Source: Epiperipatus broadwayi (Eukaryota > Animalia > Onychophora). Taken from it: 64,000 nucleotides of DNA. The translations under genes were made by a program, and so were the position numbers. The stretch lies in assembly GCA_028023455.1 (NCBI GenBank), contig JAQFVV010000002.1, positions 32,116,001 through 32,180,000 on the forward strand. Reading direction: 5' to 3'. The first letter of the stretch is position 1, and each line of letters begins with the position of its first letter. Shown one piece after another: positions 471-64,000 of this stretch. Under the pieces are notes generated by a model, which had not been told where the DNA came from, searched no databases, and saw nothing but the letters and a program-made list of their open reading frames with translations.

Positions 471-825
471 GAGTTCGAGGTACCAGGCCTGGTGTATCAG
501 TCTTCTTTGTGGAATCATTTGTCTCTATTTTCTGGTTCAGGGATTCATCTGTCAATGACCCTACCGAGTTCAGGTCTGTTTCATCTTTTCTTGGTTCAAT
601 GACCCTTTTATCGTTCTTCGTGTAGCATTTTTCAAATGCAAGTCGGAGGGCTTTCTGTCCCTCTCTCACTTGTGCCAATTCGTGGATGAGTTTGGTCAAA
701 TCTTTACATTCCTCAGCTCTCCTTTGGATTTATTGTTTTTCCCATCGTTTCGCTCTTTCTTCACTTTGCTCCCACATCTCTATAAGATTCCGGAAATGGA
801 TCTCATTATCATCCGTATTTTCCAT
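1..825 (-). pseudogene. Disrupted ORF with coiled-coil-like N-terminus and 37/38-aa tandem repeats; possibly gag-like ORF of an LTR retrotransposon; runs off the window start
   Basis: ATG at 825 gives MENTDDNEIHFRNLIEMWEQSEERAKRWEKQ, then in-frame TAA (730-732), then the frame continues into the listed 40..699 ORF. The TGA at 40-42 sits where the other repeat units have CGA (DIRDLG), and the frame continues as DLGPQTQLTKLTI. Gag identity is inference only. Confidence 0.45.
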
Positions 826-18433: not shown

Positions 18434-20939
18434 ATCTATATAAACTTTCTGCCATGAATTTTTTGCCTCTACCCAAGATTCTAATGTCTTTTTGGCCATC
18501 TGCTATCAACTGGCATTCATAGCAATTTTTTATAGTGTGCTTGATTTCGTAATTCAAATTAGAAAATCAAACATAAGATATTGCCAAGACTTTCATGCAC
18601 ACATAGCAATAAGAGCATCTTACTATAGTCCTCAGTTGGTATGAGTATGCAGTCATCAGAATGCAACCCTTGCATATAGATAGACTTCCTTGAGCATTCC
18701 AGGTCAGCCTTGCAATAGTTTGGCCGACATTTTGGTTATCCCAGTCTAATCCAATTTTTCAAACTTTGTACCATGGTTCTTATTGATCCCTTTGGCAATC
18801 TTAGTGCTGTTCAAAATTTCTGAATTCTTGCTATCAATAAAGTTTACTTTCGTAAACTTCCGCTGCACTTTACAGATATCTAGTAAATGTGGCAAAGCAC
18901 CAGTGTAATCAATCTTCTTATCAGACTTATAAACTAGTGCATAATCATAGGAAGCTAATAAATTAATAATCCACTGGATTAGTCTCTGGATGGCATGTTC
19001 TGGGGTTTTCTTATTTGGACTGAAATACAATGATCCATATATAACACAATTTTTCATCCATATTGTGATGAAACTTTTTCAATGTGAAGATAATAGCCAG
19101 AGTCAAACTGATAACTCTATTCAGCAATTGTCAAAATCCTCAAGGCATATGCAATCAGAAGTTCACCTCCAAAACAGTAATGTATGATGACAGCTCCAAC
19201 TCTGAATTGGTGGTTATAATCACTTCCTGATTGCAGCAGTAATGTACAAGGAGTTCATTAGATATTGATAAATCTTACTTTCTGAAGTGCTAAATTGCAT
19301 TCCACTCTTCCTCTCTAACACTGTCCTTTCCACACTAACTCATATAAAGATGTAACGCGTGATTTCCCTCTAAGAAAACTCAAAGAAATTAAGTAATTCT
19401 AAAAACCTTGCAAATCTTTTACATTCCTAGGCTTTGCAGTAATTTTTATACCTCTAACTTTCTCTGGATTAAGAGATTTTCCATTTTGTGTAATAACATA
19501 ACTGAGAAACTTTATCTGTGAGGTGTCCCACATACATTTCATGGGATTCAGCCTAGCTCTCACTTTGTCCAATTTTGAATATACTTCCATGACATTATTT
19601 CTAAATCATGCTCAGTCTGGGTAATAATAAGTATGTCATTCAGATATGGGCTAACTCTCTTCAAGCCTTGGAACAAATCAACCATTTTGGCTTGGAAGAT
19701 GTTTGGGGCAACTGTGATCCCATAAGATATCTTATACTTATAATGCCCTACATAAGTGCTAATGTGAGCAATTCTGCTGCTCTTTCCATAACAGGTATTT
19801 GGTGGTAGATGGACTTTAAATCAATCATCAAAAATTAGGCTTTCTGAAGTGATGCCAGAATTTCATGCCCTCTTGACACAGTATATGCTCCTTTGTTGAT
19901 GTATTTATTGTTACATGATAATACCCACAAAGACAAATAAACCTTTCTGGTTTCATTATTATTTATCACCAGTGTAGGCCATGAATGAATCTTCTTCAAG
20001 AGACAACATACCTATAGAAGCCATGACCTTAATTGTCTCAACTTTTGGTTTTAAGGCAAAAGAGATCATTTGTGGTAGAGACATAAACTAGTTTCTACCC
20101 AGTAAAAGGCTTATATTCTATAATGTTCTTTTCATTGAATCCAATTAAATTATATACTCTCCTTTTCTTTTTAAAAAACTTTTATTTTTTCTTAACCATA
20201 TGTACAGTCACATTTATAACACCCAACATGTTGATACTTTTTTTTATGTAGTCATTTTCAAGGATCTATAAAATTACATATGTATATCATTGTTACTACA
20301 AATAAAATTAATATATAAAACTGTATATACCCTTATCACAAAAATAACATTTTCCTTTCATCTATCAATAAATCTTTTTACAGATGTATTACCTTACATA
20401 ATCTACACTTACTTACTTGTTTTTTCTCTCCAAACTTTTTTCTTTTTACATACTAATGTCTTTATATATATAAAAATATCAATATTTTTTTGTCCTTTTT
20501 ATACTCTTAACCAATTACTTTAAAAACAATATCATTTTTAAATTTGCTTTTATTTTAATCTATCTTTTATATAATTCATCCTATTTAAGACAGGCTTTTC
20601 TCTCTTTATATATAAACTTTCTTTTATCATCCTTTCTTTATATAATTTTACTAATATTCTTATCTTAAAATTTATATGTCCAAATTCTTTACTATGTATA
20701 TTAACATTTGCATTTCTATCACTCAAATGTTGTTTTAACCTTATCCTTAATTTATCCTTTGTTGTACCTATATATGATAATTCCTATTATATCTTTAACA
20801 ACTTAAACACTCAATCCTATAAATTCCATACATTCCTATTTTTTAAACAGTGAGGATTGCCAATTCCTCAACAAGCTTTGTGTTAAATGCTTAGCCAGAG
20901 AGAGCATTTAAAATAACTGTCAGGAACCCCACCCCCAAA

Positions 20940-20980
20940 CCTCTGACCATGGTTTCATGCTTTGGCACTCCTCAGAGGGA
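20940..20980 (-). ncRNA. Minimal type I hammerhead ribozyme motif (core intact)
   Basis: Minus strand: tccct-CTGAGGA-GTGC caaa GCAT-GAAA-CCATGG-TC|AGAGG. Palindromic stem III ACCATGGT; predicted cleavage between 20945 and 20944. Confidence 0.75.
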
Positions 20981-21051
20981 TGCCAGGGTAGGTTCAGACA
21001 CTAGATCTAAACATACCAACTCAAAGCCAACATTTAAAACCTACACTGACA

Positions 21052-21092
21052 CCCCTCTGAGGAGTGCCAAAGCACAAAACCATGGTCAGAGG
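21052..21092 (+). ncRNA. Minimal type I hammerhead motif with a G12-to-A inactivating change
   Basis: cccct-CTGAGGA(21057-63)-GTGC caaa GCAC-AAAA-CCATGG-TC|AGAGG. Confidence 0.7.
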
Positions 21093-23217
21093 TTGGAGGG
21101 AGGTTCCTAACAGATATTTTAAATGCTCTCTCTGGCTAAGCATTTAACACAAAGCTTGTTGAGGAATTGGCAATCCTCACTGTTTATAACTTACAAGCTT
21201 AAGAGAATAGGGTCATGTGATCTATGACTCTTATTTTGACTATTTATTCCTATTTTTTGTTTCTTTTATCACATTTTCTAAATTAAATTTCTTTTTGAAG
21301 ACAAGTTTCAGAAATAAATTACATTCCTTTCTATAATTTATTATCCTTCATAATCTTTTTAATTTAAAAAAAAAAATTGAATACCTTATAAGTGCTATAT
21401 ATATTCTACTTATCTTTCTTTTTATTAAAATTCCTTTTTATTTTTTCACTATTTTTCTATCCACATAATTTATTAATAATTTTATTTGGATAATCATTTT
21501 TCATTGCCTCTTATCTTATCTATTTATTTCTTAAATAACTTTTCCCCTGAACACAAATTTATTCCTTTAATTACTCTATTATTAACAATATTTATTTTAT
21601 GTACATATTCTATATCTGATTTCCAATTACTTAATAACCCATAAAAAGTACTTTTCCTAAATATACTTGTCTCAATATTTACCCTATAATTCCTTAGGAT
21701 CTTTTTAATGTTAACATCCATGTAATTGAATTATTTATTTATTTTTCCATTGATTCGTTGTAAATCGAAAGATTTCATGAGTATTAATGTGTAATAAGAA
21801 ATGTGGACTTAATCAGTGAAGAATTGAATAGCTTCACGCTCTCAGATCTAATTGCTCCAGCTTCACCTATTTATATAGAAAGTAGGTTGAGTAAAAAGTT
21901 TCCCTTCTTTTCTTCCAAAATGTAAGCTTGTGGTTAAGACCTATAGAGGTCCCTATTATCACATTTTACGTGCATATTCTTGAGGTTACAGCCTTAGTAA
22001 ATATTACTTATTTCTCCATTGTAAATTTAATATTTTCATCAATCAAATTAATATATTCTGATTTCCTATAAAATATTCTGATCTTCACCATAAACATGGG
22101 TAGAAATTTAATCATGGTATTAAATTTTATAGATACCATCACATTATCATGTATGCCTATCTTGTTACCATTTACATCCGTAGCCAATATAAGTGTATTT
22201 TCCAACTTCTGCTTGTTTTTATTTTTACCACAAATAATAGTCCAATCTTTTAATGATAATTCTGCATGACTTACCATATTTATTTTATTTTCATAGATGG
22301 TGACATCTAATGTAATATGACCATTGTTCGTGTCATTTACTTTCTTGATATTTTCTTTATTCCTCCATCTCCCCTTGATTTAAGGACCAGGTTTGGTTTA
22401 GGTTTGCATTTGTCTTTATGATAATAGACATGAGCAAAATGTCCTTCTATAATACAAGTGTAACACTTCTCCATTAAAAATTTTTTTTACATGGGATTTC
22501 ACACAGTAGCAATAATAGGTCAAGTTATTCTTTGTAATCTTTGAACTTGTGCTAACAGTTTGTGATTTATTCATGGAGAATCGAATTGAATCGAATTGTT
22601 CTCTATACCAGTTGAAGCTTGGAATCTGCTGTATTCTCTAACACACTCTCTTGTGCAATATATTTTCTGATTGCCAGCTTATATGACAAGTTTGTCGTAC
22701 TTTATAAAATGTTCTAAAATTACGATCTGACATTAGTCTAGCAACATGTCCTCTAGCTCAGAGGCTCAGTGCTAAATCTTAATTCCGATTCCACTCACAA
22801 GTTGATTATCTCCTCATTCAAAAATATACTGGTGCCACCTATATAGACACTACAGGCTAAAAATAAACATTCAGATTTTCTATTAAGACTTGATGTGGAA
22901 TGTCTTCAGGATTTTGAAAGTCACACAACTATTTATAACTTGTAAAATGCCTCTATGAGCAAAAACAACAGAGTAGCCACCTTAACTTTGTCATTTATAA
23001 ACATATAACATTCAATGTGTTTGATGTATGCATTCCATGTTGCAGCAATATTCACATCATGAATATTATGACTTAGCAATATTATCATTTGTGTTTACAC
23101 TATTTCACTTGCTTACACAATCAGTTCAATTCCTGCACAGGCTATATAAATTTTCATCTTGTCATTATTATCTATTAATGAAAGTTCTTTTAATTGTCTA
23201 TCTGCACCATTCTGCTT

Positions 23218-24489: not shown

Positions 24490-25075
24490 TTCATCATCAT
24501 CATCATCATCAACTATTATCAATCCACTGCAGGATGAAGGTCTCTCCAAGTTTAATCCATCTTCTCTGATCTTTAGCTTCTCTTCTTCACATCACCCCTG
24601 CACACTTTCTTATTTCATCCATCCATCTCACATGTGGTCTCTTTCTGGGTCTTTTACAATCTCTTGGAATCCAGTTTAAGATTTCAATTGTCCATCTATT
24701 ATCACCTCTTCTAGCAATATGTCCAGCCCAACTCCACTTCAATCTTTTAATTTTTTCAATGAGGTCAATAACACCTGTTTGTTCTCTTACCCATACATTG
24801 CACTTTCGATCTCTTCTTGTTACTCCCAACATGGATCTCTCCATACTTCTTTGAGTGGTCTGGAGTCTCTGTATTGCTCTTCTACTAAGTGTCCAAGTCT
24901 CAGATCCATAAGTAAAAACTGGTAAAACACATTTGTTAAAAACCTTCCTTTTCAAACACAGGCATATTTCCTTTTAGTATCAAGTTATTTCTACCAAAAG
25001 CACTCCAACCAAGTTTAATTCTGATTAATTTCATCCATTATGTTTCCATATGTATTAATAATCTGACCAAACACA
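24490..25075 (-). mobile_element. RTE-clade LINE 3' fragment
   Basis: ORF 24587-24955 VLPVFTYGSETWTL...WSWAGHIARRGDNRW; (GAT)n tail at about 24492-24510. Confidence 0.92.
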
Positions 25076-29509: not shown

Positions 29510-32050
29510 TCATCATCATCATTATCAACCATTATCAATCCACTGCAGGATGAAGGTCTCTCCAAGTTTAATCCATCTTCTCCCATCATTAGCTTCTCTT
29601 CTCCACATCACCCCTACACATTTTCTTATTTCATCCATCCATCTTACATGTGATCTCCTTCTGGGTCTTTTACAATCTCTTGGAATCCAGTTTAAAATTT
29701 CAATTGTCCATCTATTATCATCTCTTCTAGCAATATGTCCAGCCCAACTTCACTTCAATCTTTTAATTTTTTCAATGAGGTCAGTAACACCTGTTTGTTC
29801 TCTTACCCATACATTGCATTTTCGATCTCTTCTTGTTACTCCCAACATACATCTCTCCATACTTCTTTGAGTGGTCTGAAGTCTCTGTATTGATCTTCTA
29901 TTAAGTGTCCAAGTCTCAGATCCATAAGTAAGAACTGGTAAAACACATTTGTTAAAAACCTTTCTTTTCAAACACATAGGCATATTTCCTTTTAATATCA
30001 AGTTATTTCTACCAAAAGCACTCCAACCAAGTTTAATTCTATGATTAATTTCCTCTATTATGTTTCCATCTGTATTAATAATCTGACCAAGGTATTTGTA
30101 ACTCTTAACTTCTTCTAATTCATCATAATCAATCTTTATTTTCATATTTTGAGCAAATCGATTAAACATTACTTTAGACTTTTTAACATTTATCTTTAGT
30201 CCTACTTTCCTACTTTCATCTGATAACTCCTGCAACATTTCCTGCAGCTCGGAAGCATTATTTGCAAAAACAACTACATCATCTGCAAAATCTAAATGAC
30301 TTAAATAATCTCCATTTACTTTCACTCCTTTAGTTTCCCATTTTAATCCACAAAATACTTCTTGCAGCACTGCTGTAAAAAGTTTTGGAGATATGGAGTC
30401 ACCTTGTCCTACACCTTTCTCAATGTTGACTTTCCCAGTATCATTATGTAATCTAATTGTTGCTGTTGCATTTTTATAAATATTCTTTAAAATATGACAA
30501 TATCCTGGATCTATACCTTGATGATCCAATGCTTTAATCACTGAAGAAATGTTTATAGAATCAAATGCCTTTTCATAATCTACAAATCCAAAACATAATG
30601 ACAACTCATATTCATTTGTCCTTTCTATAACTTCTCTCAATACTTGAATATGATCTACTGTACTAAAACCACTTTTAAATCCAGCTTGTTCTCTTGGTTG
30701 GTGAAAATCCAAGGTTCTCTGTAGACGAGTTGTAATTATCTTGGTAAAAATTTTATATAAAACTGATAAAAGGCTGATAGGTCTGTAATTTCTAATATCT
30801 TCTTTATCACCTTTTTAAAATATTAATATTATTACTGCATTCTTCCAATCATCCGGTACATCTTTATCATTTAGACATTTGGTATATAACTTTGCTAATA
30901 TTTTTTCTGTTTCTTCACCTGCTTCTTTTAATATATCAATTATAATTCCATCATTACCTGGAGCCTTTCCTTTTTTCATACATTTAATTGCATTTCTCAC
31001 TTCTTCATTTAAAATTCTGGGCAATTCAGAAGATGTAATAGATATAGGAGGTACTTGTTCTTTATTACTATATAATTCTTGATAAAAATCTTCTACCAAT
31101 TTCATAATGTCATCCCTCTTTTTAGTAATAATTCCATCTTTTTTCCTTATTGCAGATATAAATTTCCTACCAATACCAAAATGTTGTTTTACATTCTTAA
31201 GACTTTTATTTTCTTCTACAGCTTTTCTTGCTAGTTCACAGTTATACTTTCTTATATCATTTTCAACTCTTTTCCGCACCATTTTACAAAATTCGAGATA
31301 TTCAATTCTTTTTAATGCATCATTCTTGCATATCTTCATATTCCTTCTTTTCTTCATAAGTTCTCTAGTCTCAGTAGAAATTTTATTAGTCAATTGCTGC
31401 TTTTTTCTACCAGCTATCTTTGTTGCAGTTTTTAAAAGTGTATCAGTTATTTTCATATTAATTTCATTCAAATCTGAATCATGTTCAAAATCTACTAATA
31501 CTTGAAACCGATTTGTAAGTTCTAATTTAAATTCATTAGAATGTTTCTGAAGATTAGGAATATCAACTGTAAATATAGTTTTTCTTAATAATTTTTGTCT
31601 CTCTAGTTTTACATTAACATGTATCTTACCCCTTACTAATCGATGATCACTTCCTGTGTTAAATTTATTAAGAACATTACAATCTTGAAATATGTATTTC
31701 CTGTTAGTCAAAATATAATCCAATTCTGCTGTACCTTCATTTGGATGCTTCCATGTCCATTTCCTTCTAACATTTTTCTCAAAAAAATAATTCATAATAT
31801 AAAGTTTTTCCTTCTCTGCAAACTCCACAAGTCTATGTCCTCTCTCATTTCTATTACCATAACCAAAATTACCTACAACACTTTCATCTTTCATTTGTTT
31901 ACCAATTCTAGCATTAAAATCTCCCATAACAATTTTAAAATGTTGTTTACTCTGATCAAAAGCCTTTTGTACAACCATATAAAAATCTTCTACTACTTCA
32001 TCACTGTGAGAACTTGTTGGGGCATAAACCTGAATTATCTGCATTTGATA
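29510..32050 (-). mobile_element. Near-intact, 5'-truncated RTE-clade LINE (APE + RT in one frame, two nonsense mutations)
   Basis: Listed ORFs 30815-32044 and 29750-30712 are in the same frame, separated by TAA (AAA in the 63199 copy), with TGA replacing TGG at 29750-29752. Motifs QVYAPT, GDFNA, LDYIL, GSDHR, DYEKAFDS, GQGDSISP, FADD; microsatellite tail. Confidence 0.96.
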
Positions 32051-34320: not shown

Positions 34321-35525
34321 TTTATGATATTTTATTAATAATTATATTGTCTAAAAAGTCCAACTAAGATTGAGCGACCAGTGAACAAATACACAATAAA
34401 GAATAATCTGAATAGTTTGTAACAACAACATCTCACACAGTTCACTAATGTTCAGTTCCCTCAATTTATTTTCAGACTGGCTGCTACAAAAATGGTTCTC
34501 AATGGACTCGGTTTACGCACACCTTGGCCCCAGTTGTTAAGCTGCACACGAACACATCATAGTATAGCACTGCAACTGGCTTTAAGCTCCTTACAGCTTC
34601 TGTTTCTGCAACAGTTCACCTGTAACTCCACTTGAAACCGCTGGAAACCCAACTCATTTAGTGGCTATCTGGACGGTTTCCTCAGGTTACTGTCTCCCAA
34701 TCTTTGTGGTCCTATTCAGCTATTGCCTGTGAACACATTTCCACTGAGTGCTGCACATTAACTGAAGCACTGACCCAAAATCTCTGCTACACTGGAATTG
34801 AACTGAAAAATCATCTGGAGATGCACTCGAATGTTTCACGTATTTGTTATGTACTCTTTTTATAGCTTTCTGATTACTCCTACAATTAATTATATTTTCC
34901 ATTACTAATTAAATTGTGTTTTCGGAATTCCTTACCATATAAGGCAATTTAGTCTTTTATCAAAAGAAATATTTGCAATCAGCAAATATTTCTTGGAATT
35001 TTATCGATAGCCATTATGTTAATTCTCTAATTAAATTTTTATCAGTTATCAGTTCGCGATCTAAAAAAAAAAAAACTCTCTAATAAATTCTAGTTTTTCT
35101 GGAGTGTACAAACTTGTATAATATTTTTACAAAAATACAACTAAATAAATAATAATTAAAAACTTTTAAAGGCAAAAACAATATTATCTTCTGACTTCTA
35201 GATTTACAGTATGCTATTTTTTGTGCTAGCCTTAACCAATTCAAAAGATGATCTATAGAATGTATTTAATGAAACCCATAAAAATATTAGTTTGGTAATT
35301 AATATTTAAAAAAAAAATCAAGTTATTTATTAGTCAGTTATGGAAGAAAAATTTTCAACCACTTTTAACTTGAATGGTTATTAGCTAGATAATATGAATC
35401 TAGTTAAATATTTTGGCAGCTTTTTTGATAGAAAAGCAGACTCAAATGCTAAGGTGAAACTCAGACTCATACATGGTATTGTTGCATTTAACAAATTCAA
35501 AGACAAGGAATTTCATTATAAAATA

Positions 35526-35680
35526 AGGCAAAACTCTCCATACAGTAGTGCCACCCTGTGCCAACCAGATTAATTAATGGATGTCAGAAAGTTTGTGCAT
35601 AAAAATCTCTATCTAGTGCCTACTCATCAAAAATCCCCAGACTAGTTTCTAGCCTTTGTCAGTGAGAAGCTTTGGTGATC
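35526..35680 (-). mobile_element. Short HHR-bearing repeat family, copy A (ribozyme decayed)
   Basis: Shares aggcaaaactctccatacagtagtgccacc... with the copies at 39730, 57518 and 62429. Minus strand reads ttctca-CTGACAA-AGGCTA-GAAA-CTAG-TC-TGGGGA (G8-to-A change, 7-nt stem II deletion). Confidence 0.8.
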
Positions 35681-36859
35681 ATGTGAATTTCATTATAGTG
35701 ATATATCCTCTATAACTAGCTTAAATGAATATACAGTTGCTATTTTGTATTTATTGTAAGGAATTGAGATCTGGGATCCCTATCAACTTAAGATTCTACA
35801 CGTATTATGCCTAGATCATAAGATCAATAGACATGATTATCAGATTCCCGGATATTATTGGTTACTATTGTAAATGATATATTCATTGGATTTGCACGTG
35901 AAGTAAATGAATGGTGAGACTTTACAACAACAAACAAAAATTCTATGATGGCATGATTTTCATACAAAGTCAGATTCAATTTATATTATAATTTCAAAGA
36001 CTCGAAAGAAGTATAAAGCTGACAACATTCTATGGAAAAATAAAGCTGGTAGATTATAATGGGCAACTATAATTAGATAAAGCATTGCTTTTTTTTCAAT
36101 AAGTTAGCTACGATCGAAATTAAGATAGCAGCAAACTGCCGAATCAATAGAACAAAGAAATAGCGTGTAATAACCAGATGTATTTATGATGAACGAATTA
36201 CTTTATATATATAATCAAGGCAAAGTACATTTTAAATTTTTTATTCTTTGTTTACTGAAATTAGAATGACGGTACTCTTTTAAGGTTTGGCTACTACTAA
36301 TGATATAAAATAAAATTGTTAAAATAATTTTCTTGTCTATTATTTATTTAAATTCTAATAAGATACTTTTTAACATTATCGTAATCATTAAAACAAAATA
36401 TGTACAATATGAATATTTAAAGCTATTCGCAATTTTACTACACTTCAGTTTTCCATAACTTATTTTTCGGTAAAGTATAAATAAAAAAAAATAAAAAAAG
36501 ACGGGAGCGACTAGGAAGTCAATTAAACAATCTAATGAAATAAATCGTTGACATTCGGGAAAAAAAATTAAATAGCCCTCGATTTGAAGCCAACTCTATC
36601 CAAAACATAGCAAAGAAAACAAATTAAAAATCTCATTCAGAATATTAGTAACTATTTAACTAAGGCAAAAATCCCAATGACAACAAATCATCTCATCATG
36701 TTTCATAAAATATTACATTCTTTTTATTTTAACTTTTTACATTATAAATAGTGTGAAATTGTAAAATGATGTTAATTTCAAATTACTATTGACCAAATAA
36801 AATAAATTGCTTCTTTTTAATACTGACGTAAAACATTGTGCGAGACTCATAAAATTAAG

Positions 36860-37037
36860 ATGGCTGTCAATGGAGAGTGGTATTTGAGAGAAGACGGATG
36901 CTTGTCCGGTGTTGAACCAGCCGTCAATGTTTTATACCATCCCACTCTCAATACTATTTTAGTAATAACTACAGAACCTTCCGTCAAAGTCATAGATGTT
37001 AACTCTGGATCACTACTTCAAAAGTTTAATTTATGTG
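36860..37037 (+). CDS. BIRC6: Baculoviral IAP repeat-containing protein 6 (Bruce/Apollon), first coding exon
   Basis: MAVNGEWYLREDGCLSGVEPAVNVLYHPTLNTILVITTEPSVKVIDVNSGSLLQKFNLC aligns with the recalled BIRC6 N-terminus (SEWLVLRDGC...LSYHPALNAILAVTSRGTIKVIDGTSGATLQ). Ends at a canonical phase-1 donor G|GTAAGG; context aagATGG. Confidence 0.9.
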
Positions 37038-39729
37038 GTAAGGCTCTTTTAGATATCTTAAAAATTCTGTCTTAACGTAAAATAGGCTTACATAAATTTG
37101 ACAAAAATTTTACATTTGCAGCATAACTTTATTTATGAATGTACATTTAATATAATATTTATTATTCATTTAAATTTGTATTGTCTCTGAGTAGAACATT
37201 TTATAATATATGTATATCTAATACGTTTTTTGTTTTTTTCCTTCAATTTCTGAATCGGTTTCTGTTTACGATAACAACGTAATATGTGGTCGAGCCTTTA
37301 TGTATAAGAAATTAGCCCTTTTTAAGATTAACTTTATATTTGATAATAATAATGTAATTTTTTGCCTATTTATATGGATATTCCTAAATGTAAGATATTA
37401 CATTTTAAACCGGAGATGTATTATTAACTGAATGCTTTTGTGTACCGTACCATATTTACGTAACCAAAACATCTTTTTTAAAGAAATAGACCACTTAGTA
37501 CAAATTATTTACTTATTATAATTTGTTAATTTTTTAATTTATTAGATGAAATTTGTTTTAAAAATATAATAAATTCGAAAATATTTTTTAAGGAATATTT
37601 GTATATTTGATTGTATTAAATGTTTACGAAATTAATAATGCCTTTATTTTATGGAAGGCGGTTAAGAAAAATATATATATTTCAAATTTATCTTCCAGAA
37701 ATTAATTTATATATATGTAGTTATTGCTTTCTTGCTTAAAAATGGACATTAATTAACGTAGAAATTTAAAAAAAACTATACGTAGGCTATGTGTAGCTAT
37801 ATAGTGTATCAAAAAAGTAGTTATCAAGATTAAATAAAGTATAAACGCAATAATAATTTGACATTATAACAACACTACATTTTAAAACTGTCATTATATT
37901 CTAATGATAATTTTTAATTAGAAATGAAGCATTATAATAAAAAGTAATGGTTTTGCAAATAAATGATTTATACGTAGATACTGTATTTTTAAAAATAAGT
38001 TTTGGAATGACAAGTTTTGAAAAATGTTTAAAAGAATACTTCATTGATCTTGAAAGGGTTTCTGAAAGTAAACTGACTTATTATTTTTTGGATATTTAAA
38101 GAAATATAGGAATAAATTGAAAGTAAAACTAAATGTCAAGCTATTTATATGTGAATCAAAAGATTTGTGCAAAATTAAGTGTTTTACAGAAAAGATTGAA
38201 TATAGAGAGGTAAATAAATAATCAAAATAAGATTGAAATAAACAACTATTAATAACTATATTAGGTACTTTGGTACTATTCCTGTAACCAAGGAAAAATA
38301 GGACTTAGTTATAATATTTATTGAATCATCTTTCATCTCCATTGAGTTTTTTCAAGATATTATAATATCTTGAAGAAAGTCTCAATGGAGATTAAAGCCA
38401 GTTCGATAAATATCTTGAGAAGATCTCAATCGAGATGAAAACCGGTTTGATAAATAGTATAATATACGTAGTTATTATAATTGTTTATTTCAGTCTTATT
38501 TTGATTGATTATTTATTTATGTATTTGTGATAACATTATGGACCAATAAATTGTATTGGATATTTGACCATTATAGTAATATAGAGAGGTGTAAAGCAAG
38601 AATGATATCACAAAGGCTAAACTCTCCATCACATGATGCTTAGTGGCTTAAAACAAGAATATCTTTTGATTTGTATTGATTTTTATTTAGATGAATTGCT
38701 ATGTTATTGTTTAAATAAGAATGGAGTTAGTTTTTGGGGTAAGAAAATATGTTTTTTCAGAAATGACTGTATTTGATAGTTATTGAGAATAAGCTTAACA
38801 AAATGCTCACTATTATTAATGAAATGTATAGCAGGTTTAGAACAAAAATAAATTTATCTACATCTAATGCGCTATTTATAGGTGAAAATGATAAAATTTA
38901 AAAATGATAATTGAACAGTAAATAGTAGTCTTTTAAAGTATTGAAAAATTTATTTATCTGATGATTAAATAAAGAGAAAGATATTAGACTAAGAATTGTA
39001 GGTACTAAATAGGCTTTTTGAAGTTTAAAGAGTTGTATTAAATGTTGGTTTGGAATAAGATTTTACGTATCTATTGTAGAGACTTGGATAGTTAACAAAA
39101 GAGAAGTAAAAAGATTGAAGGGCTTTTGAGGTACAGATTGGAGGAGGGGCAGTGTAAACAAGATAAATTGGAAGAATAGGTTTAATAAATGATGAATTTT
39201 TGAAAATGGTAATTGAGATTATTTAATAAAGAAATTATAAAGAAGATGAATTGTTTAGGATTATAAAGTTAGAAATAGAGGAATTATGTAAATTTGCTTG
39301 AAGAATGTTTAGAAGAGAATAGAAAAAGAATGAAGTTGATTGATAATCTAAAAATGTAAATAATTATGAGGGTGTGATGAAAAATAGAACAAAGGGCCAA
39401 AAGATTTGTGGAATTGTTAATGAAGAACTTGCCTTTGACAAATAACTAATGATGGTGATAGTAGTGCATGATACAGTCATCCAATTTTCAGATAACTAAA
39501 AAAAAATGTTTAAACTTTGCTTAGATTCAGATTGCATGTTGCAGATGACTGCACTAAACCAGAGATTTCTTTTTATCATAACATTTTTGTATATAAAATA
39601 TTCACACGCACAAATCTACCTTTGAATTGTAACTTCTGGAAAATCACACAAATGTGCATATGAATTTAATATGTATTGAATGTCACATGATCACCATTTC
39701 ATATGCTTGCACATGCTGTTCATAACAGT

Positions 39730-39960
39730 AAACTCTCCATATAGTAGTGCCACCAAGTGCAAGCCTTCATAATCAATGGATGCAGAAAGTTTGTGCATAA
39801 AATCCCTATCCAAGGCTCCTCGCTGATGAAAGCCACAAGCTAGAAACTAGTCTGGGGATGTTCGATGAGTATACATTAGGCAGGGATTTTATGCACAAAC
39901 CTTCCTGTATCCATTGATTACAAAGGCTTGCACTTTGTGGCACTACTGTATGAAGAGTTT
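39730..39960. mobile_element. Short HHR-bearing repeat family, copy B, in fold-back form
   Basis: Arms 39730-39807 and 39882-39960 are inverted repeats; the 74-nt loop contains the ribozyme. Confidence 0.88.
39817..39858 (+). ncRNA. Minimal type I hammerhead ribozyme motif, catalytic core intact
   Basis: TCCTCG-CTGATGA(39823-29)-A-AGC cacaa GCT-A-GAAA(39843-46)-CTAG-TC|TGGGGA. 6-bp stem I (two G.U pairs), palindromic stem III ACTAGT, predicted cleavage 39852|39853. Confidence 0.75.
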
Positions 39961-42639
39961 AGTATTCAGGTATTGAATGCAGCTGTTAAACATATTAGAA
40001 TAACAGTCCGGAATTTGTATATAAGTATCTTAAAACAATTCGTTTGTTTTCAAAGGGTGAACATATTAACTGTTAATTGCATGTATGTTGGGTTTAAATT
40101 GTAACATCACCTTACAAAGCTGTCAATTATAGCTTTATATAAGCTGATAAATTTCAACCACTGACATTAAATATCTAATAAGTAGAAATGCAATTGGAGT
40201 ATTTATAAATTATAACAAATTTTAGTACTCTATTGCAAATATAAGCTTTAAGATCTTAATCACTGTACCAAGCTTTTATACTGTACAGGTATATTATCTA
40301 AACATTAGTCTTGTCAGATATGCTAAAAAAAAAACTTGCTCAATACTTTAGAATAGCAGACTGAATTTCATGAAAGGCAATCTGTTTCAAAAATGTGAAT
40401 ATTGACAATATAACATTAAATGCATATCATGCAAGGCAGAGACAATTATAATCTTATTTACAACCTTGTACAAGGTGATAAATATCCATTATTGGTTCGT
40501 CTAATTTTTCCTATAGCTGCGCAGTGCAGAAATGCACTAAAATAAAATTTCAGACACGATTAAATGTGCAATATTTTTACAAATTGTAGTATTTATTATT
40601 AGGGTTATATATACATAATAAAACAAATGTTAACAGTAAATGTTCTCATTACATTTATTTTTCTTGGAATTTTTTCTTCTGTTCGTTATAGAAATCTATC
40701 CTTTGTATGTATCGTCTATGTTTATAGTTGTATCATTACTTACATTTAATTTCATTCAAAAATGGTTTGCTTGTTTTGAGTTTTTATTTAAATAAGTTTG
40801 TAATAATAAATTCTTGCAAACATTCTGCAAATGATGCTTGTAATGCATTGATTTTCTTATATGTAGAAAAACAATAATTAAATTATAAATATATAAGAAC
40901 TATAGTGTTATAATTTATATTATATTTTTAGGATAAGTGTATTGTCAAAAAAATATTTTTTTTACATTTTATTTACTCAACTATTCACTTACATGTATGG
41001 GGGTAGAGTCTATAAAGATTGTATTGCGATTGTGAACATTTTTAAAATCTAGGTTTTTGTTTATTAATTTTTACTCATCCAAATTTTTTTTTATATATGG
41101 GTAAAATGTTTTGCTGTAACATAGCATTTGTAAGGTTGTTCTATACAATTTTTTTTTTTTTTAATATAACACTTAAAATTTGTTTGTTTTATATTCTACA
41201 CAGTTTATCAAAATCACCATATTATTTTGATTATTATGAATGTTTTGTGTATAGATGTTCTGCTGGAACTATGTGCACGATAAGTAAAATCACCTATACA
41301 TCTTCATATGAATCAATTAATGACTTCACAAACATAAAGCTTAGAGAAAACATTTCCCACTGCTGGATTAATTATATGATAAATAATAAATGCAACTGGA
41401 ATATTTATATATAAAGATTAGACAGGTTTATGCGCACATTGCAAATATAAGCTTTAAATCATTAATTATTACTAATGTATATGTATTTCATCAAACTACT
41501 ATTCTGTCATGAAAGTTATGTATCTAAATCTCTAGAATACTCGTTAAATCTGTCTAGCCAAAGACTGACCGTATCTATGATGGTTGTGATAGTATATACT
41601 AAAGTCATTATATTTTTTTATATATTTATAGACATTTTGGACTCATATCATAGTAAATAAGGCATACTTATATATATGAATTGCATTATTATTAAAATTC
41701 TCAAATTTTTTTTTAATTAATTAAGCCTGATAGTTATGAATTTTAATGAAATATTCAACAAATCTATTTTGATTTATTTATAATTTATCCATTGATTAAG
41801 AGAACAAATCTATTATATATTTAATTACTTACTCTCACATATTTTAGTTAAAGCCCATACATAGATTTCGAAAGCATTGAGTTTAATTTAAAACATGGAA
41901 ATTCTAAGCTTTTCTTATCACAGCATCCAAACACTTGAAAGTCAAATTAGAATTAGAATTATGTATGTGATAAGAAAAACATGCTTTTCTGTCATACTAA
42001 TCAAGAAATTAAAGTATTTGTAGTAAATAAATCCGGGTAAGAAAACAATTCTCAAAAATCTATTAAGACATTTATTTAGTGTCAGTAATTAAGTTGTACG
42101 TTGGTGCATTAGATATTAAGTAGTTGTGATGAAATATATTAAAATAGAATAGCCAGTTAGATAACTATTGGCCAAAGATCGTATACTTGAATCAACTCCT
42201 TATGAGCTTCTGAAACTTAAGCTGTCCTAAATATCTGTATGTGCTGCTAACCTATAGATATGATCAGTCATAAAAACTATATGGCTATAGGAAAATAACT
42301 AGTTAAAATACTTGCAAAATCATTATTAAATCTACCTACAAATGTTTAAAAATTAAATAATTTTTTTCAAGGTGTTAAATTTTATAATTCTTAAGCTAAA
42401 TATGAAAAGAGGAAATTTATAGTCTAATTAAAATCCTGCAGCTATTAACTTTGAATAATGTGTGACTTATTGTATTTTTATAAAGTAATATTTATTTGAA
42501 AGTAGTTATTCTTAAATATTTAATTTTAGTTTTCAAATTATTTTAAATTGTTCATTTTTTATACAAAGGAACTAACTGCAAACTATGCTTTATTTTGTTC
42601 CAATCCTTCCTTGCATTCAACATATCTAATATATGTCAA

Positions 42640-42719
42640 GCAGTGGTGGTCGAGAGGTCAGCGACAGCTGCTTTACAAGCAGATGTCCCGGGTTAGCGGG
42701 TTCGCTTCCCGGCTGATGC
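42640..42719 (+). pseudogene. tRNA-like sequence (tRNA pseudogene or SINE head) with TAC anticodon
   Basis: A-box-like TGGTCGAGAGG, anticodon arm CTGC-TTTACAA-GCAG, B-box-like GGTTCGCTTCC, imperfect acceptor stem, 8-nt extra segment before the T-loop. Confidence 0.65.
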
Positions 42720-45700
42720 TATAACATATGAGAAAAAAAAACAAAACATATATAATATATAACAGCTCACATTTTGTTAATAAACATTGATTAAAAAAGA
42801 ATACATCTTGTTTATTTAACTGCAGATGTACAGTACTTTTCAACATATACATATATCTACATGGACATTTTTATAGTATAAACAAAATTTTAATAATAAT
42901 TATATACAGTAGTTATTTTTAAAATAAAATAAATAGCAGAATGTCTGATCACTCATGCATTCAATGAAGCAATAACAATAAGAAAAAACTTTTTATTTTT
43001 ATAATAAAATAAATAGCAGAATGTCTGATTTTCCTAGCTATAAAATACATTTTAAGCAATTTTTTTTCTGTTATAGAAATAATAATGGTCTTGTTTTTAA
43101 AAAATTAGAATCTCTAATTGTTTGGAAATCAATGTCAACCTTTAGTACATTCTAAAATTTTGCATAACTCTTAGCATTATGCTCAGAAAATATTTTTTTA
43201 ACAAAATACAGTTTATCAAATTTGGAAAGGATAATGAAGAATAAAATATATATGCTTTCAACATAAACTGATTTTTTTTTTATTAATATATATATATAAT
43301 CACATAGGGCACTCAGAGAAGGAAAAATGGTTACTGAGTATCGTAAAATTTAAAAATTGTTTTTGTTTGTTTGTTTATATTGATGGTTTATTTACATTTG
43401 TATTTGTTTACATTTTTTTTTAATAGCTTCTAATTGAAGTTGTATAATTAGATACAGTGCACTCACAACTCAACTGTATATGATATTGATTTGTTAGGTG
43501 TATTTCTTTAGGCTCTTATTTTAAATGTTAATTGCCATCGGAAAGTAATAATTAAACTTTGCTGATATTTATAATTATTAATTGTAAGATTTGATCCAAA
43601 CTTCACATTTATAGCCATTTGCTAGACTTTTTAATACAGTTTCATATTTATTACATAAATAGCAAAATCATATATTAGTATTATTCACTTTAATTTTTAC
43701 ATATTTTTAATGTATTATAAACATCATTTTAAATAAATCCTTATTTCTTGCTAAAATAAGTTGATTTATAATTGGATGAATGGATTATATGGATATTAAA
43801 TATTAGCAATTAAGATTATTTCATTATTTATATTTTCTTTTTTTATTGAAAATCCCAAATGAAATTATTTACAATTTTTGGAGATCTTTCTCAATTTGAT
43901 TTCTAATATTATACACTGGCTAGGCTGACTATATGTATTGTCTTAATTGAATAGTTTCATTATTTTATTCTTTCAAATGTCTGTCCTTTTAATAAAAAAA
44001 TTAAAATTGTCCAGGTATTTGATTCTTAATATATCTTCAAATAGTATTATAACAGGGCTGAGTTCAAACCCTGTTCTAAGTCATAAGGCGATACAACCGA
44101 GCATACATATATACTCAAATCAAGTGTAATATTAAGTCAAATTTTTTTTTTTTTCTCGTTGTTTTGTATGTATGCGTGTGTGTATCTATTTTAAGTAAGT
44201 AAATAAAAAGAGATTGAAACATAAGAGGGACGGGGGATTATATGGTTTGTGCTCTTATATTTTGTTTATACGCTTGTTTGTATTGCTGCATGAGTGAGTA
44301 AATGTAATAGTTTCATAAAAAGAAATTGATTCCAAGACGGACGACTAAAGGAAAGATTTTACAAATTCTAAAAGATATGTTAATTGGAAATAAAGAATTC
44401 GAAAAGTTGCAGATCGCTATCTCAAGACAAAGCCGTTTTAATTAATAAAAGTTATAAATAAGAGACAATGAACAGTCGAGTGTGGATCTCAAGGTAAAAT
44501 TGAAATTCCTGAACATAGATAAAAACAAAGAAAAGAAAAGTTATTGAAAAGATTTTCTATTTGCAAACCATGTGGTTTAATTAAAAAGACGAGAACAATA
44601 GCATGATTAATTGGAGTTGAAAAGCTGAACTTTGAAGAGGATTCTAGAACGGTGACTGCCACGAGCAGGATCGAAGGAAAATTAGTAAAAGAAAAAAGTT
44701 TATATATATTAAAATCATGAACAGGCTGGGGTAGAAGAACAGAACGGACCGGGCTATGCCATCCATCCTGCGGAGATATTATCGTCACTGTCCATGAAGG
44801 AGCGAAGCCCTTTCTAAAGTTATGGAAAGAACAGCATTCACCGGATGCCATTGATTGCCTTATGGAAGCCCACAAAAGAAAGAAATCATTTACTCATAAC
44901 ATCGCAGCACGAAGCCAGTGGAAAATTACCATTAATCTACACCCGGGTGTGATAAAGTAGGTAACTCAAATATTTTCTTAAATGACAGTAACCTCTTGAA
45001 TAAGAATATCTCAGTAAAATAATGCATAAAAGGGTTAAAAGTAAATAAAGAGACAGTTGAAATAATGCCCTATATAACAATACGCCTAAATAGACAGGAT
45101 AATGACTGATTGCAGTTATTTTTCATGCTATGATATATATGTTTTGTTTGTTACATTTATGAACTTATGCGAGTGTGTATTTACATGCGTGTCATTTAAG
45201 TATTCAGGTACAATCCAATATCCAATTACGGGATTCTGTTGGGTTTTATCATGTTTTTGCATTAATAAATATTAAGTAGTGTTTTAAATATAATTGTATG
45301 TGTTTGGTGTTAATTTTTTAAAAAAAAAAGGGTATAGATTACATAGTATAATTAAAGAGTAGCATTAAGAACAAAAGTAAGAAAGAAAAATGAATCATTT
45401 ATGCACTCCGTGCGCATTTGACCTGTTCCCTCCACCTCTTTCCCACGGTCAACGACTACTACTCCTGAGTGAGCTAGCCAGAGGTATAAGCTCTATCCAC
45501 TAGAAATAGCTACTCGTTCTCTCCCAGCATAATTCTTACTTACTCGTAAGTAAGATTGGCGCTTGGAGTCAAATTGACGTCCATAAATATGCTGGGCGAG
45601 TAATTAGAGTACATTGCAGAACCAACTACATATATATGTGTTCGCATCATAATTTTCGTTTAAATAAAAAGAGCAGAAACTTAGATTTGAAATACGTAAT

Positions 45701-56750: not shown

Positions 56751-57517
56751 TCTGCTAATTAATCAGCATTCACTTGCTGTGATCAAATTCTTCTGAACCA
56801 CAGACCTTAAAACATATTGGTCAATAACTTGCACCTTGAAATGAAATAAGATATTACTTTAAATTTATGCTATAATATATTTTTCAATTGGATTACAAAC
56901 TCAGGGTGTGACTTATAACATACTACTAATTTCTATTATATGCTTTCCATTTGGTAATACTGAATAGTATTTTTCACAGGGATCTTGAAGATTCTTTTAT
57001 ATCCATAGCAAACTGAAGTACCATGCTCCCTTTTGATATAGTTATGATTTATAAGCAGTTGAGAGTTAGTGTATTATAAAATATTAAACAGAACTCGTCA
57101 AATAAGGCATGTAATCAAAATATCTGTACCATTCTACGTGGATAATGTGCTTTATTGATGTGATCTTTTGATGGGAAATGACTCTCAAACACAATGAAAC
57201 CAATACTACAAAGTTAAATCAATATGGTCTTTTATTTATAACAATACTAATAAAGAACAAAAACATACACACATTAGGTTAAATACTTCATTTAACAATA
57301 AAAAAAAGTTAATAAGCTTGAAACTATTTATACATTGATAATAACTTATTTACATTCTTTACAAATAGCTTTAATGATTATGATATCCTCTTTACCCTTC
57401 CCGTAGTTTATATCTAGTTTTTTTGAAATTATCCATTTATTATTTTTATCATTATGTATGCTTTCATACTAATCTGATATATTTGCATCATTCACGAGTT
57501 TTCTGAGATCTTAAAAC

Positions 57518-57680
57518 AGGCAAAACTCTCTATACATATTGCTACTCAGTGCAAGCTAGAGTAATCAATGGATGCCAGAAAGCTTGTACATAAAATTCCC
57601 ATCTAGTGCCTACTCATCCAATATCTCCAGACTAGTTTCTGTCTTGTAGCCTTCGTCAGTGAGGAGCCTTGGATCTGAGA
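57518..57680 (-). mobile_element. Short HHR-bearing repeat family, copy C
   Basis: Minus strand at 57624-57665 reads TCCTCA-CTGACGA-A-GGC tacaa GAC-A-GAAA-CTAG-TC|TGGAGA; core intact, one mismatch each in stems I and II. Confidence 0.82.
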
Positions 57681-57732
57681 GCATTGCACCTAGATCTTAG
57701 GATCTAATGCAACCCTCCAGCAGCCATCTTTT

Positions 57733-62428: not shown

Positions 62429-62492
62429 AGGCAAAACTCTCCATACAGTAGTGCCACCCTGTGCCAACCAGAGTAATCAATGGTTGCCAGAT
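62429..62492 (-). mobile_element. Short HHR-bearing repeat family, copy D (terminal fragment, no ribozyme in the window)
   Basis: aggcaaaactctccatacagtagtgccaccctgtgccaaccagagtaatcaatgg is nearly identical to copy A and abuts the RTE element. Confidence 0.85.
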
Positions 62493-64000
62493 GTAATAGA
62501 TATAATAGGTACTTGTTCTTTATTATTATATAATTCTTGATAAAAGTTTTCAACCCATTTCATGATGTCCTCTCTCTTTTAAGTAATAATTCCATCTTTT
62601 TTTCTTATTGCAGATATAAATTTCCTACCAATTCCAAAATGTTGTTTTACATTCTTGAGACTTTTATTTTCTTCTACAGCTTTCCCTGCTAGTTCACAGT
62701 TATACTTTCTTATATCATTTTCAACTCTTTTCCGTACCATTTTACAAAATTCGAGATATTCAATCCTTTGTAATGCATCATTTTTATATATCTTCATATT
62801 CCTTCTTTTCTTCATAAATTCTCTAGTCTCAGTAGAAATTTTATTGGCCAATTGCTGAGTTTTTCTACCAGATATCTTTGTTGCAGTTTTTAAAAGTGTA
62901 TAAGTTATTTTCCTATTAATGTCATTTAAATCTAAATCATGTTCAAAATCTACTAATACTTGAAACCGATTTGTAAGTTCTAATTTAAATTCACTAGAAT
63001 GTTTTTGAAGATTAGGAATATCAACTGTAAAAATTGTTTTTCTTAATAATTTTTGTCTTTCTGGTTTTGCATTAACTCGTATCTTACATCTTACTAGTCG
63101 ATGATCACTTCCTGTGTTAAATATATATATATCTGAGGAAATTTATATCTGCAATAAGAAACAAAGATGGAATTATTACTTAAAAAAGAGATGACATTAT
63201 GAAATGGGTAGAAGACTTTTATCAAGAATTATATAGTAATAAAGAACAAGTACCTCCTATATCTATTACATCTTCTGAATTGCCCAGAATTTTAAATGAA
63301 GAAGTGAGATATGCAGTTAAATGTATGAAGAAAGGAAAGGCTCCAGGTAATGATGGAATTATAATTGATATATTAAAAGAAGCAGGTGAAGATGTAGAAT
63401 TTTTTTTAGCAAAGTTATATACCAAATGTCTAAATGATAAAGATGTACCAGATGATTGGAAGAATGCAGTAATAATATTAATATTTAAAAAAGGTGATAA
63501 AGAAGATATTAGAAATTATAGACCTATCAGCCTTTTATCAGTTTTATACAAAATTCTTACCAAAATAATTACAACTCGTCTACAGAGCACCTTGGATTTC
63601 CACCAACCAAGAGAACAAGTTGGATTTAAAAGTGGTTTTAGTACAGTAGATCATATGCAGGTATTGAGACAAATTATTGAAAGGACAAATGAATATGAGT
63701 TGCCATTATGTTTGGATTTGTAGATTATGAAAAGGCATTTGATTCTATAAACATTTCTTCAGTGATTAAAGCATTGGATCATTAAGGTATAGATCCAGGA
63801 TATTGTCATATTTTAAAGAATATTTATAAAAATGCAACAGCAACAATTACATTACATAATGATACAGGGAAAGTTAACATTGAGAAGGTTGTAAGACAAG
63901 GTGACTCCATATCTACTCCATATCTCCAAAACTTATTACAGCAGTGCTGTAAGAAACATTTTGTGGATTAAAATGGGAAACTAAAGGAGTGAAAGTAAAT
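62493..64000 (+). mobile_element. RTE-clade LINE with 5' inversion; continues past the window end
   Basis: 62493-63120 is a minus-strand EN/linker segment (FNTGSDHRL...KKDGIIT). About 63135-64000 is the plus-strand linker + RT (ORF 63199-63723). The two segments overlap by about 130 nt. Confidence 0.92.

What the first reader, a model, noticed from the sequence alone, without database searches (positions are those of the whole stretch)
39730..39960. Core-intact hammerhead in sense orientation in the putative BIRC6 intron 1, displayed in the loop of a ~78-bp hairpin
Seen: the fold-back duplicated only the sequence 3' of the ribozyme, so the long stem closes around, rather than masks, the complete HHR (39817-39858). 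All invariant core nucleotides are present. It is on the BIRC6 sense strand 2.8 kb after exon 1, while the other intronic copy with a ribozyme (57624) is antisense. Inference: co-transcriptional self-cleavage could affect BIRC6 pre-mRNA processing or release a structured small RNA. The palindromic stem III predicts dependence on a second copy in trans, making cleavage sensitive to family RNA levels.
Basis: partly seen in the sequence, partly recalled or inferred. Interest (0 to 1): 0.8.

Follow-up and report, generated by a model that had tools for sequence, protein, structure and literature searches.

The report
Retroelement fold-back with hammerhead motif
The hammerhead-ribozyme motif and the long hairpin around it are real, but together they are one old, truncated head-to-head insertion of a very common Penelope-type mobile element that landed in the first intron of BIRC6, and nothing indicates that it cuts RNA or affects the gene.

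Summary
At 39817-39858 (+) there is a type I hammerhead motif with the core boxes CUGAUGA, GAAA and UC, a 6-bp helix I, and a palindromic ACUAGU in place of helix III. It sits in the 74-nt loop of a hairpin with roughly 78-nt arms. It lies 2.8 kb downstream of BIRC6 coding exon 1 (36860-37038) on the same strand.

The hairpin is not a display device. The whole unit (39683-39969) is flanked by a 10-bp target-site duplication. It consists of a one-sided 47-nt extension, an inverted 5'-truncated arm and a forward copy. This is the published insertion signature of Penelope-like elements, and earlier notes of this scan report the same pattern elsewhere in this genome.

Three sibling copies lie in the window, two of them with their own duplications. 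The two arms are 90% identical, so the insertion is not young.

Several points argue against activity:
- Helix II has only three pairs closed by an A.A mismatch.
- Rfam reports no hammerhead.
- The catalytic fold is thermodynamically disfavoured here.
- No same-strand partner copy was found in the window.
- Published single motifs of this class show no detectable cleavage.

Read evidence could not be obtained. Verdict: an ordinary member of a known kind, of low interest.

The parts
39673..39682 (.). Left target-site duplication, GTATTGAATG
   Evidence: Exact 10-mer found only at 39673 and 39970 in the whole window, both on the + strand. About 3.7% of equivalent window pairs share a 10-mer by chance.
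39683..39729 (.). One-sided 47-nt extension ('tail') between the left TSD and the inverted arm. Its first 14 nt, TCACATGATCACCA, recur directly after the left TSD of the sibling copy at 35.6 kb.
   Evidence: 39674-39696 matches the left junction of the 35-kb copy (20 of 23); the extension is not a copy of the right flank (score 10 against a null mean of 10.4). No other copy of it in the window.
39730..39807 (-). Inverted, 5'-truncated copy of the element's 3'-terminal 78 nt. This is the left arm of the hairpin and carries no ribozyme.
   Evidence: It is 89.9% identical to the forward arm and 74-84% identical to the siblings.
39808..39969 (+). Forward copy of the element: the hammerhead motif plus a tail of about 110 nt. 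Positions 39882-39960 form the right arm of the hairpin.
   Evidence: Aligns over 153 nt to 57523-57674 (-) at 78%, and to 35531-35680 (-) at 76%.
39817..39858 (+). Type I minimal hammerhead motif.
- Helix I: 39817-22 with 39853-58.
- CUGAUGA: 39823-29.
- Helix II: A.A, A-U, G-C, C-G, with loop CACAA, 39830-42.
- GAAA: 39843-46.
- Palindrome ACUAGU: 39846-51.
- C17: 39852.
- Predicted cut: 39852/39853.
   Evidence: No Rfam hammerhead hit. The hammerhead-compatible fold scores -18.0 against an MFE of -23.6 kcal/mol for the loop.
39970..39979 (.). Right target-site duplication, GTATTGAATG
36860..37038 (+). BIRC6 first coding exon: ATG at 36860, donor GTAAGG starting at 37039.
57514..57691 (-). 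Sibling copy (178 nt), antisense to BIRC6, flanked by the 8-bp TSD TAAGATCT. The core reads CUGACGA...GAAA, and helix II has a G.A mismatch.
35521..35684 (-). Sibling copy (164 nt) upstream of exon 1, flanked by the 13-bp TSD TATAATGAAATTC. Its ribozyme is broken: G8 is changed to A and 7 nt of helix II are deleted.
62434..62500 (-). 3'-terminal fragment of the same family.

Best explanation
The feature is a single, fairly old insertion of a short non-coding hammerhead-bearing retroelement. Elements of this type are mobilised by Penelope-like element (PLE) machinery.

**How the hairpin arose (inferred from published mechanism).** PLE enzymes cut both target strands and extend both by reverse transcription. 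This often leaves two 5'-truncated copies head to head, a short extension on one side only, and a target-site duplication. In this copy the inverted arm was truncated 78 nt from the element's 3' end. The forward copy was truncated 9 nt upstream of the ribozyme. The hammerhead therefore ends up in the loop by accident of the two truncation points.

**The motif itself.** It is the family's minimal type I hammerhead, inherited from the source element. An RNA of this class can form an active site only by pairing with a second copy.

**Expected behaviour in the BIRC6 pre-mRNA (inferred).** I expect it to be inert or nearly so, and to be removed with intron 1. The reasons are a weak helix II, a competing local hairpin, and the absence of a same-strand partner nearby.
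For: **Insertion anatomy.**
- A 10-bp TSD flanks 39683-39969.
- The inverted 5'-truncated arm abuts the forward copy at 39807/39808.
- A 47-nt one-sided extension lies at the left end.
- Sibling copies at 35.6 kb and 57.6 kb have their own 13-bp and 8-bp TSDs and the same 3' end.
- The arms are each other's closest relatives: 89.9% against 71-84% to the siblings. This fits one template or one event.

**Published signature.**
- An inverted 5'-truncated copy plus a 30-40 bp tail is typical of PLE insertions (PMC8557442).
- Both target strands are cleaved and extended, and the tail lies between two internal RT start sites (PMC11167929).
- Minimal hammerheads with palindromic 15.2-16.2 occur massively in metazoan PLEs and as isolated truncated copies. 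Some occur as pairs on opposite strands 100-700 bp apart. A single motif showed no detectable cleavage in vitro (PMC4209133).
- 44% of Xenopus retrozyme copies are intronic (preprint 10.64898/2026.07.22.740005).

**Against activity of this copy.**
- No Rfam hit.
- Helix I has about 3% and helix II about 0.5% probability in the ensemble. The GCUAG-AAA-CUAGU hairpin sequesters G12-A14.
- The double-hammerhead fold scores -18.0 against a dimer MFE of -27.6 kcal/mol.
- The only other descriptor match in the window is an unrelated weak motif.
Against: - No PLE ORF is attached to this copy, so mobilisation by PLE machinery is inferred from the signature only.
- The left extension begins with 14 nt that also start the 35-kb copy in the forward orientation. 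The simple two-strand priming model does not predict this. A nested second insertion or a template switch may be involved.
- This copy is the best preserved of the family in the window. All core positions are intact, and helix II shows an A-U where the sibling has G-C, a change on both sides. Some residual activity therefore cannot be excluded.
- Nearest-neighbour energies ignore the tertiary contacts that stabilise hammerheads.
- No RNA data were obtained.
Confidence: 0.85

Rival explanations
1. One reading: the sense-strand hammerhead cleaves the BIRC6 pre-mRNA co-transcriptionally, possibly with family RNA supplied in trans. Cleavage would lower BIRC6 output or release a structured RNA, and the hairpin would present the ribozyme.
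For: - The classical core is intact, helix I has 6 pairs, and the motif is on the sense strand 2.8 kb into the intron.
- The motif is transcribed before the right arm, so it could fold before the hairpin closes.
- A mismatch at the base of helix II does not abolish activity in a published case: the axolotl HHR with U.U cleaves, and cleaves better as a dimer (PMC7229834).
- Earlier scan notes say the family is abundant, so trans partners could exist.
Against: - Single minimal motifs gave no detectable cleavage, and dimers only low cleavage (PMC4209133).
- No RNA-seq ends were seen at a PLE hammerhead site in Anolis (PMC11167929).
- Helix II has 3 pairs plus A.A, there is no Rfam hit, and the active fold is disfavoured by 5.6 kcal/mol with a competing hairpin over G12-A14.
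- No sense partner was found in 27 kb.
- The arms are 10% diverged with uncompensated mismatches.
- The hairpin is explained by the insertion mechanism.
Confidence: 0.05
2. The roughly 80-bp imperfect intronic hairpin, rather than the ribozyme, is the active part. It would be a substrate for dsRNA enzymes (Dicer-type small-RNA production or A-to-I editing), giving small RNAs against the repeat family.
For: The hairpin is very stable (-131.7 kcal/mol, z = -14). It resembles miRNA-precursor models only at the level of generic hairpin shape: MIR162_1 scores 32 bits against a gathering score of 75.
Against: No small-RNA data are available. The Rfam score is far below threshold and belongs to a plant family. 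Such fold-backs are reported throughout this genome in earlier scan notes, so this copy is not special.
Confidence: 0.07
3. The fold-back arose in two steps. First came a complete forward copy (39683-39696 joined to 39808-39969). An inverted 5'-truncated copy with a 33-nt tail (39697-39807) later inserted into it.
For: - The 14 nt at 39683-39696 match the start of the 35-kb copy in forward orientation.
- An imperfect short duplication (ATCACCA / ATCCA) flanks the 111-nt inverted segment.
- A 33-nt tail fits the published 30-40 bp range.
Against: - The two arms share subfamily-specific characters and are closer to each other than to any sibling.
- A hit of the same subfamily inside a 176-nt target is improbable unless the family is extremely active or targeted.
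- The flanking duplication is imperfect.
Confidence: 0.2

Closest known systems
Minimal type I hammerhead motifs of metazoan Penelope-like elements (Cervera and De la Pena 2014, PMC4209133)
   Same: - Type I topology and core boxes.
- Helix III replaced by a palindrome, so only a dimer can form it.
- Occurs mostly as isolated motifs in truncated copies, sometimes as head-to-head pairs.
- Highly variable within one genome.
   Different: - Helix I (6 bp) and helix II (4 positions) have the sizes of 'canonical' metazoan type I motifs. The published min-HHRs have a long helix II of 7-8 bp.
- The conserved G10.1-C11.1 pair is replaced here by an A.A apposition, shared by all three copies in the window.
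Penelope-like element insertion architecture (Craig et al. 2021, PMC8557442; Frangieh et al. 2024, PMC11167929)
   Same: An inverted 5'-truncated copy lies next to a forward copy, with an extension on one end only, a TSD, and high 5' truncation.
   Different: - There is no ORF, and the whole unit is only 287 bp.
- The extension is 47 nt (33 nt if the recurrent 14-nt piece is set apart), against the published 30-40 bp.
Metazoan non-LTR retrozymes (Cervera and De la Pena 2020, PMC7229834; Li et al. 2026 preprint)
   Same: A short non-coding AT-rich repeat with a type I hammerhead and TSDs longer than 4 bp. It is proposed to depend on PLEs. A mismatch at the base of helix II is known from the axolotl (U.U).
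   Different: Retrozymes are defined by tandem repeats that yield circular RNAs. This copy is single and truncated, so no unit between two cut sites exists.
[quoted passage not shown]
   Same: A type I motif on the sense strand of an intron of a protein-coding gene.
   Different: Those motifs are conserved across species and have a helix III stable enough to act alone. This one is a decaying repeat copy without a monomeric helix III, and its conservation could not be tested.

Membership tests
Hammerhead ribozyme, type I minimal/dimeric class | Core boxes C3-U4-G5-A6-N7-G8-A9, G12-A13-A14, A15.1-U16.1 and H17 | tested here: met
   CUGAUGA at 39823-29, GAAA at 39843-46, U at 39851, C at 39852.
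Hammerhead ribozyme, type I minimal/dimeric class | Helix I and helix II can pair, with the conserved G10.1-C11.1 closing helix II | tested here: inconclusive
   Helix I has 6 pairs, 2 of them G.U. Helix II is A.A, A-U, G-C, C-G, and the G10.1-C11.1 pair is absent in all 3 copies. The pair next to it is A-U here and G-C in the 57-kb copy, a change on both sides.
Hammerhead ribozyme, type I minimal/dimeric class | Palindromic 15.2-16.2 / loop 3, allowing an intermolecular helix III | tested here: met
   ACUAGU at 39846-51 is self-complementary and identical in all three copies.
Hammerhead ribozyme, type I minimal/dimeric class | Recognised by the curated covariance models (Rfam Hammerhead families) | tested here: not met
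   No hammerhead match at gathering score or at E <= 10 on 501 nt.
Hammerhead ribozyme, type I minimal/dimeric class | Self-cleavage at H17 | not testable with these tools
Energies only: the active fold is 5.6 kcal/mol above the MFE.
Penelope-like-element type insertion | Inverted 5'-truncated copy adjacent to the forward copy | tested here: met
   39730-39807 (-) abuts 39808-39969 (+).
Penelope-like-element type insertion | Target-site duplication around the whole unit | tested here: met
   GTATTGAATG at 39673 and 39970. The siblings have 13-bp and 8-bp TSDs.
Penelope-like-element type insertion | Optional 30-40 bp tail on one end only | tested here: inconclusive
   A 47-nt extension lies on the left only (33 nt plus a recurrent 14-nt piece) and nothing comparable on the right. 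The family-wide tail sequence could not be checked.
Penelope-like-element type insertion | RT plus GIY-YIG endonuclease ORF of the same family | not tested
   This copy is non-coding. I did not search the window or the genome for the autonomous partner.
Metazoan non-LTR retrozyme | Tandem head-to-tail repeats, each with a hammerhead | tested here: not met
   No direct repeats in 39600-40100. The copies in the window are dispersed.
Conserved intronic hammerhead (HH9/HH10 type) | Conservation at the orthologous site across species, and a helix III stable in the monomer | tested here: not met
   Helix III as a monomer is one A-U pair over a 4-nt loop, which adds +4.8 kcal/mol. Conservation across species is not testable here.
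microRNA precursor | Match to a curated family above its gathering score | tested here: not met
   MIR162_1 scores 32.2 bits against 75, and mir-9243 scores 15.4 against 83. This is generic hairpin resemblance.

The most novel reading that the evidence does not exclude
The family's hammerhead with an A.A apposition at the base of helix II may be catalytically competent when paired with abundant family RNA in trans. In that case this sense-strand intronic copy would be cut at 39852/39853. BIRC6 pre-mRNA integrity would then depend on the expression level of a retroelement family.
Probability: 0.04. Interest if true: 0.55.

Novelty: new member of a known kind. Interest (0 to 1): 0.12.

Why it matters
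As found, it matters little. It is one more decayed copy of an abundant hammerhead-bearing retroelement in an intron.

It is a clean worked example of how Penelope-type integration creates 'ribozyme in a hairpin loop' structures by accident. This should temper similar readings elsewhere in this genome.

Only the family-level question may deserve a bench test: do hammerheads with an A.A apposition closing helix II still cleave? That question is not specific to this locus.

Tried and rejected
**Rfam.** I scanned the whole window at gathering score and the locus at E <= 10. There was no hammerhead hit, only a tRNA-like hit at 42640 and generic hairpin resemblances.

**Exon 2.** I searched for BIRC6 exon 2 with five homologues at permissive settings. 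Nothing above chance turned up, so the intron runs past the window end.

**Sequencing runs.** I asked for kind 'any'. That returned four DNA holders of one sample, one small putative RNA run holding 3% of the words, and one run of unknown kind holding 1%. Asking for RNA only might have served better.

**Read laying.** No read evidence exists. Two of my own local scripts did read the window file whole: the descriptor scan and the random-window control for TSDs.

**In-situ duplication.** I tested whether the left extension is an inverted copy of the right genomic flank. It is not: score 10 against a null mean of 10.4.

**Chance occurrence of the motif.** Rejected. The motif is homologous in three copies, and the pattern is expected 0.01 times.

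**miRNA precursor.** Rejected on score.

**Organism.** I did not try to identify it.

Full report
**1. What is there**

The sequence at 39817-39858 on the + strand reads as a type I hammerhead.

| Part | Sequence | Coordinates |
|---|---|---|
| 5' strand of helix I | UCCUCG | 39817-22 |
| Core box | CUGAUGA | 39823-29 |
| Helix II and loop | AAGC-CACAA-GCUA | 39830-42 |
| Core box | GAAA | 39843-46 |
| Self-complementary hexamer | ACUAGU | 39846-51 |
| C17 | C | 39852 |
| 3' strand of helix I | UGGGGA | 39853-58 |

- A pattern made of the two core boxes and the palindrome matches twice in the window against 0.01 expected.
- My own relaxed descriptor covered three core types, a palindromic helix III, and helices I and II of at least 3 bp. 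It found this motif and one other weak candidate, against 0.2 per shuffled window.
- The inverted repeat is real. Its arms are 39724-39807 and 39882-39966.
- The 261-nt stretch folds at -131.7 kcal/mol, z = -14.
- The motif lies wholly in the 74-nt loop.

**2. Gene context**

- The ORF at 36860-37038 (+) aligns to residues 55-111 of human BIRC6 in solved structures (E about 2e-6).
- It also aligns to the extreme N-terminus of full-length homologues of 4,677-4,858 aa.
- It ends at a GTAAGG donor.
- With five homologues and permissive settings, no second exon appears before position 64000.
- If the gene continues, intron 1 is therefore longer than 27 kb. The motif then lies 2.8 kb into it on the sense strand.
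- Earlier notes of this scan place BIRC6 introns 65 kb and 380 kb beyond the window end. This agrees, but I did not verify it.
- Transcript evidence could not be obtained.

**3. What the hairpin is**

The window holds further copies of the same repeat.

| Copy | Strand | Length | TSD | Note |
|---|---|---|---|---|
| 57514-57691 | - | 178 nt | 8 bp, TAAGATCT | |
| 35521-35684 | - | 164 nt | 13 bp, TATAATGAAATTC | |
| 62434-62500 | - | fragment | none found | 3'-terminal piece only |

The same logic defines the unit at the finding.

- An exact 10-mer, GTATTGAATG, occurs only twice in the window. It lies at 39673-82 and 39970-79, bracketing the structure. About 3.7% of comparable window pairs share a 10-mer by chance.
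- Between these duplications lie three pieces: a 47-nt extension (39683-39729), the inverted 3'-terminal 78 nt of the element (39730-39807), and a forward copy (39808-39969).
- The forward copy starts 9 nt upstream of helix I.
- The two arms are 89.9% identical to each other but only 71-84% identical to the siblings. They share subfamily-specific characters. They therefore come from one template or one event, and about 10% divergence has accumulated since.

This layout is the published signature of Penelope-like elements.

- The purified Anolis enzyme cleaves and extends both target strands. It starts reverse transcription at two internal sites that delimit the tail (PMC11167929).
- Minimal hammerheads occur in the repeats of these elements and, far more often, as isolated truncated copies. 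Some occur as pairs on opposite strands 100-700 bp apart (PMC4209133).
- Earlier notes of this scan, one with a follow-up, describe the same 'fold-back + hammerhead + one-sided tail + TSD' pattern for several families in this genome. Another example sits in this window at 20845-21245.

The hammerhead is in the loop simply because the inverted arm was truncated downstream of the ribozyme and the forward arm was truncated upstream of it.

**4. An unresolved detail**

- The first 14 nt of the extension, TCACATGATCACCA, recur in the same orientation directly after the left TSD of the 35-kb copy. There they run straight into helix I.
- One possibility is that this piece is a recurrent terminus of the family.
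- The other is that the structure arose in two steps, with an inverted copy plus a 33-nt tail inserting into a complete forward copy. An imperfect short duplication (ATCACCA / ATCCA) flanks the 111-nt inverted segment.
- The extension is not a copy of the right genomic flank.
- I give the two-step origin about 0.2. Either way the mechanism is retroelement integration.

**5. Is the ribozyme likely to work here?**

*Points in favour*
- The classical core is intact.
- Helix I pairs over 6 positions.
- The helix II pair next to the A.A is A-U here and G-C in the 57-kb copy, a change on both sides.
- A mismatch at the base of helix II is tolerated in a published natural case. The axolotl motif with U.U cleaves weakly alone and much better as a dimer (PMC7229834).
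- Earlier notes say the A.A apposition is a family-wide trait in this genome. In this window all three copies have it.

*Points against*
- The 2014 survey lists the G10.1-C11.1 pair among the consistently conserved features of this class. It also reports no detectable cleavage for a single motif, and only low cleavage for dimers and trimers.
- Rfam's covariance models give no hammerhead hit, even at E <= 10.
- In the loop context the hammerhead-compatible fold is 5.6 kcal/mol above the minimum (-18.0 against -23.6).
- Helix I has about 3% and helix II about 0.5% probability in the ensemble.
- A 5-bp hairpin, GCUAG-AAA-CUAGU, hides G12-A14.
- An explicit double hammerhead scores -18.0 kcal/mol, against -27.6 for the best dimer and -22.4 for two separate monomers.
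- These energies ignore tertiary contacts and are only indicative.
- A dimer needs a partner with the same helix I and helix III strands on the same RNA strand. The other two copies that keep the ribozyme region are antisense, and one of them lies upstream of the gene.
- In Anolis, no RNA-seq reads begin or end at the PLE hammerhead site.

**6. Orientation and location**

- One sense copy against two antisense copies is what chance gives.
- Intronic location is common for such elements. 44% of copies in Xenopus tropicalis are intronic (preprint 10.64898/2026.07.22.740005).

**7. Verdict**

- The functional interpretation is not supported. The feature is an ordinary, aged, 5'-truncated fold-back insertion of a known kind of element.
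- The scan has described the same architecture and the same helix II peculiarity before on other DNA of this genome.
- The remaining open question is whether hammerheads with an A.A closure cleave. It belongs to the family, not to this locus.

**8. Limits**

Two local scripts read the whole window file.
- No genome-wide family alignment was made.
- No comparison with related species was made.
- The organism was not identified.

Noticed in passing
window 38415-38448 (+): A second hammerhead-like motif lies on the BIRC6 sense strand, 1.4 kb upstream of the finding. It has a U3-A8 core (UUGAGAA), a 5-bp helix II, the palindrome ACCGGU and a 4-bp helix I. The descriptor expects 0.2 hits per shuffled window, and 'helix I' overlaps a short direct repeat (GATAAATA), so it may be chance. 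A nested inverted repeat lies just upstream at about 38330-38400.
   Followed up: partly
window 42639-42721 (+): A tRNA-Val(TAC)-like sequence with an oversized T-loop region: Rfam 32.3 bits against a gathering score of 29, also called by ARAGORN. It lies in the same intron and strand. Earlier scan notes describe tRNA-headed hammerhead SINEs in this genome, so it may be such a head rather than a tRNA gene.
   Followed up: partly
window 20845-21245: Another long fold-back from a different sequence family: arms of about 130 nt around a short loop. It shows the same head-to-head architecture as the finding.
   Followed up: no
window 29750-32044 (-), also 62579-63723 and 24587-24955: A non-LTR (LINE-type) retrotransposon with ORFs that look like endonuclease plus reverse transcriptase (409 aa and 320 aa in adjacent frames), read from the ORF translations alone. 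Fragments of the same family occur elsewhere in the window, one next to the 62.4-kb hammerhead-element fragment.
   Followed up: no
window 39683-39696 and 35671-35684: The same 14-nt piece, TCACATGATCACCA, sits directly inside the left TSD of two independent insertions of the family. In one it is followed by the ribozyme, in the other by a 33-nt unknown stretch and the inverted arm. It may mark a recurrent terminus of the template RNA.
   Followed up: partly
window 40-699 (-): A 219-aa ORF containing a roughly 35-aa unit repeated about four times (KIFHEVKKCPKLYLE..LPANDIRDLG). I did not examine it.
   Followed up: no
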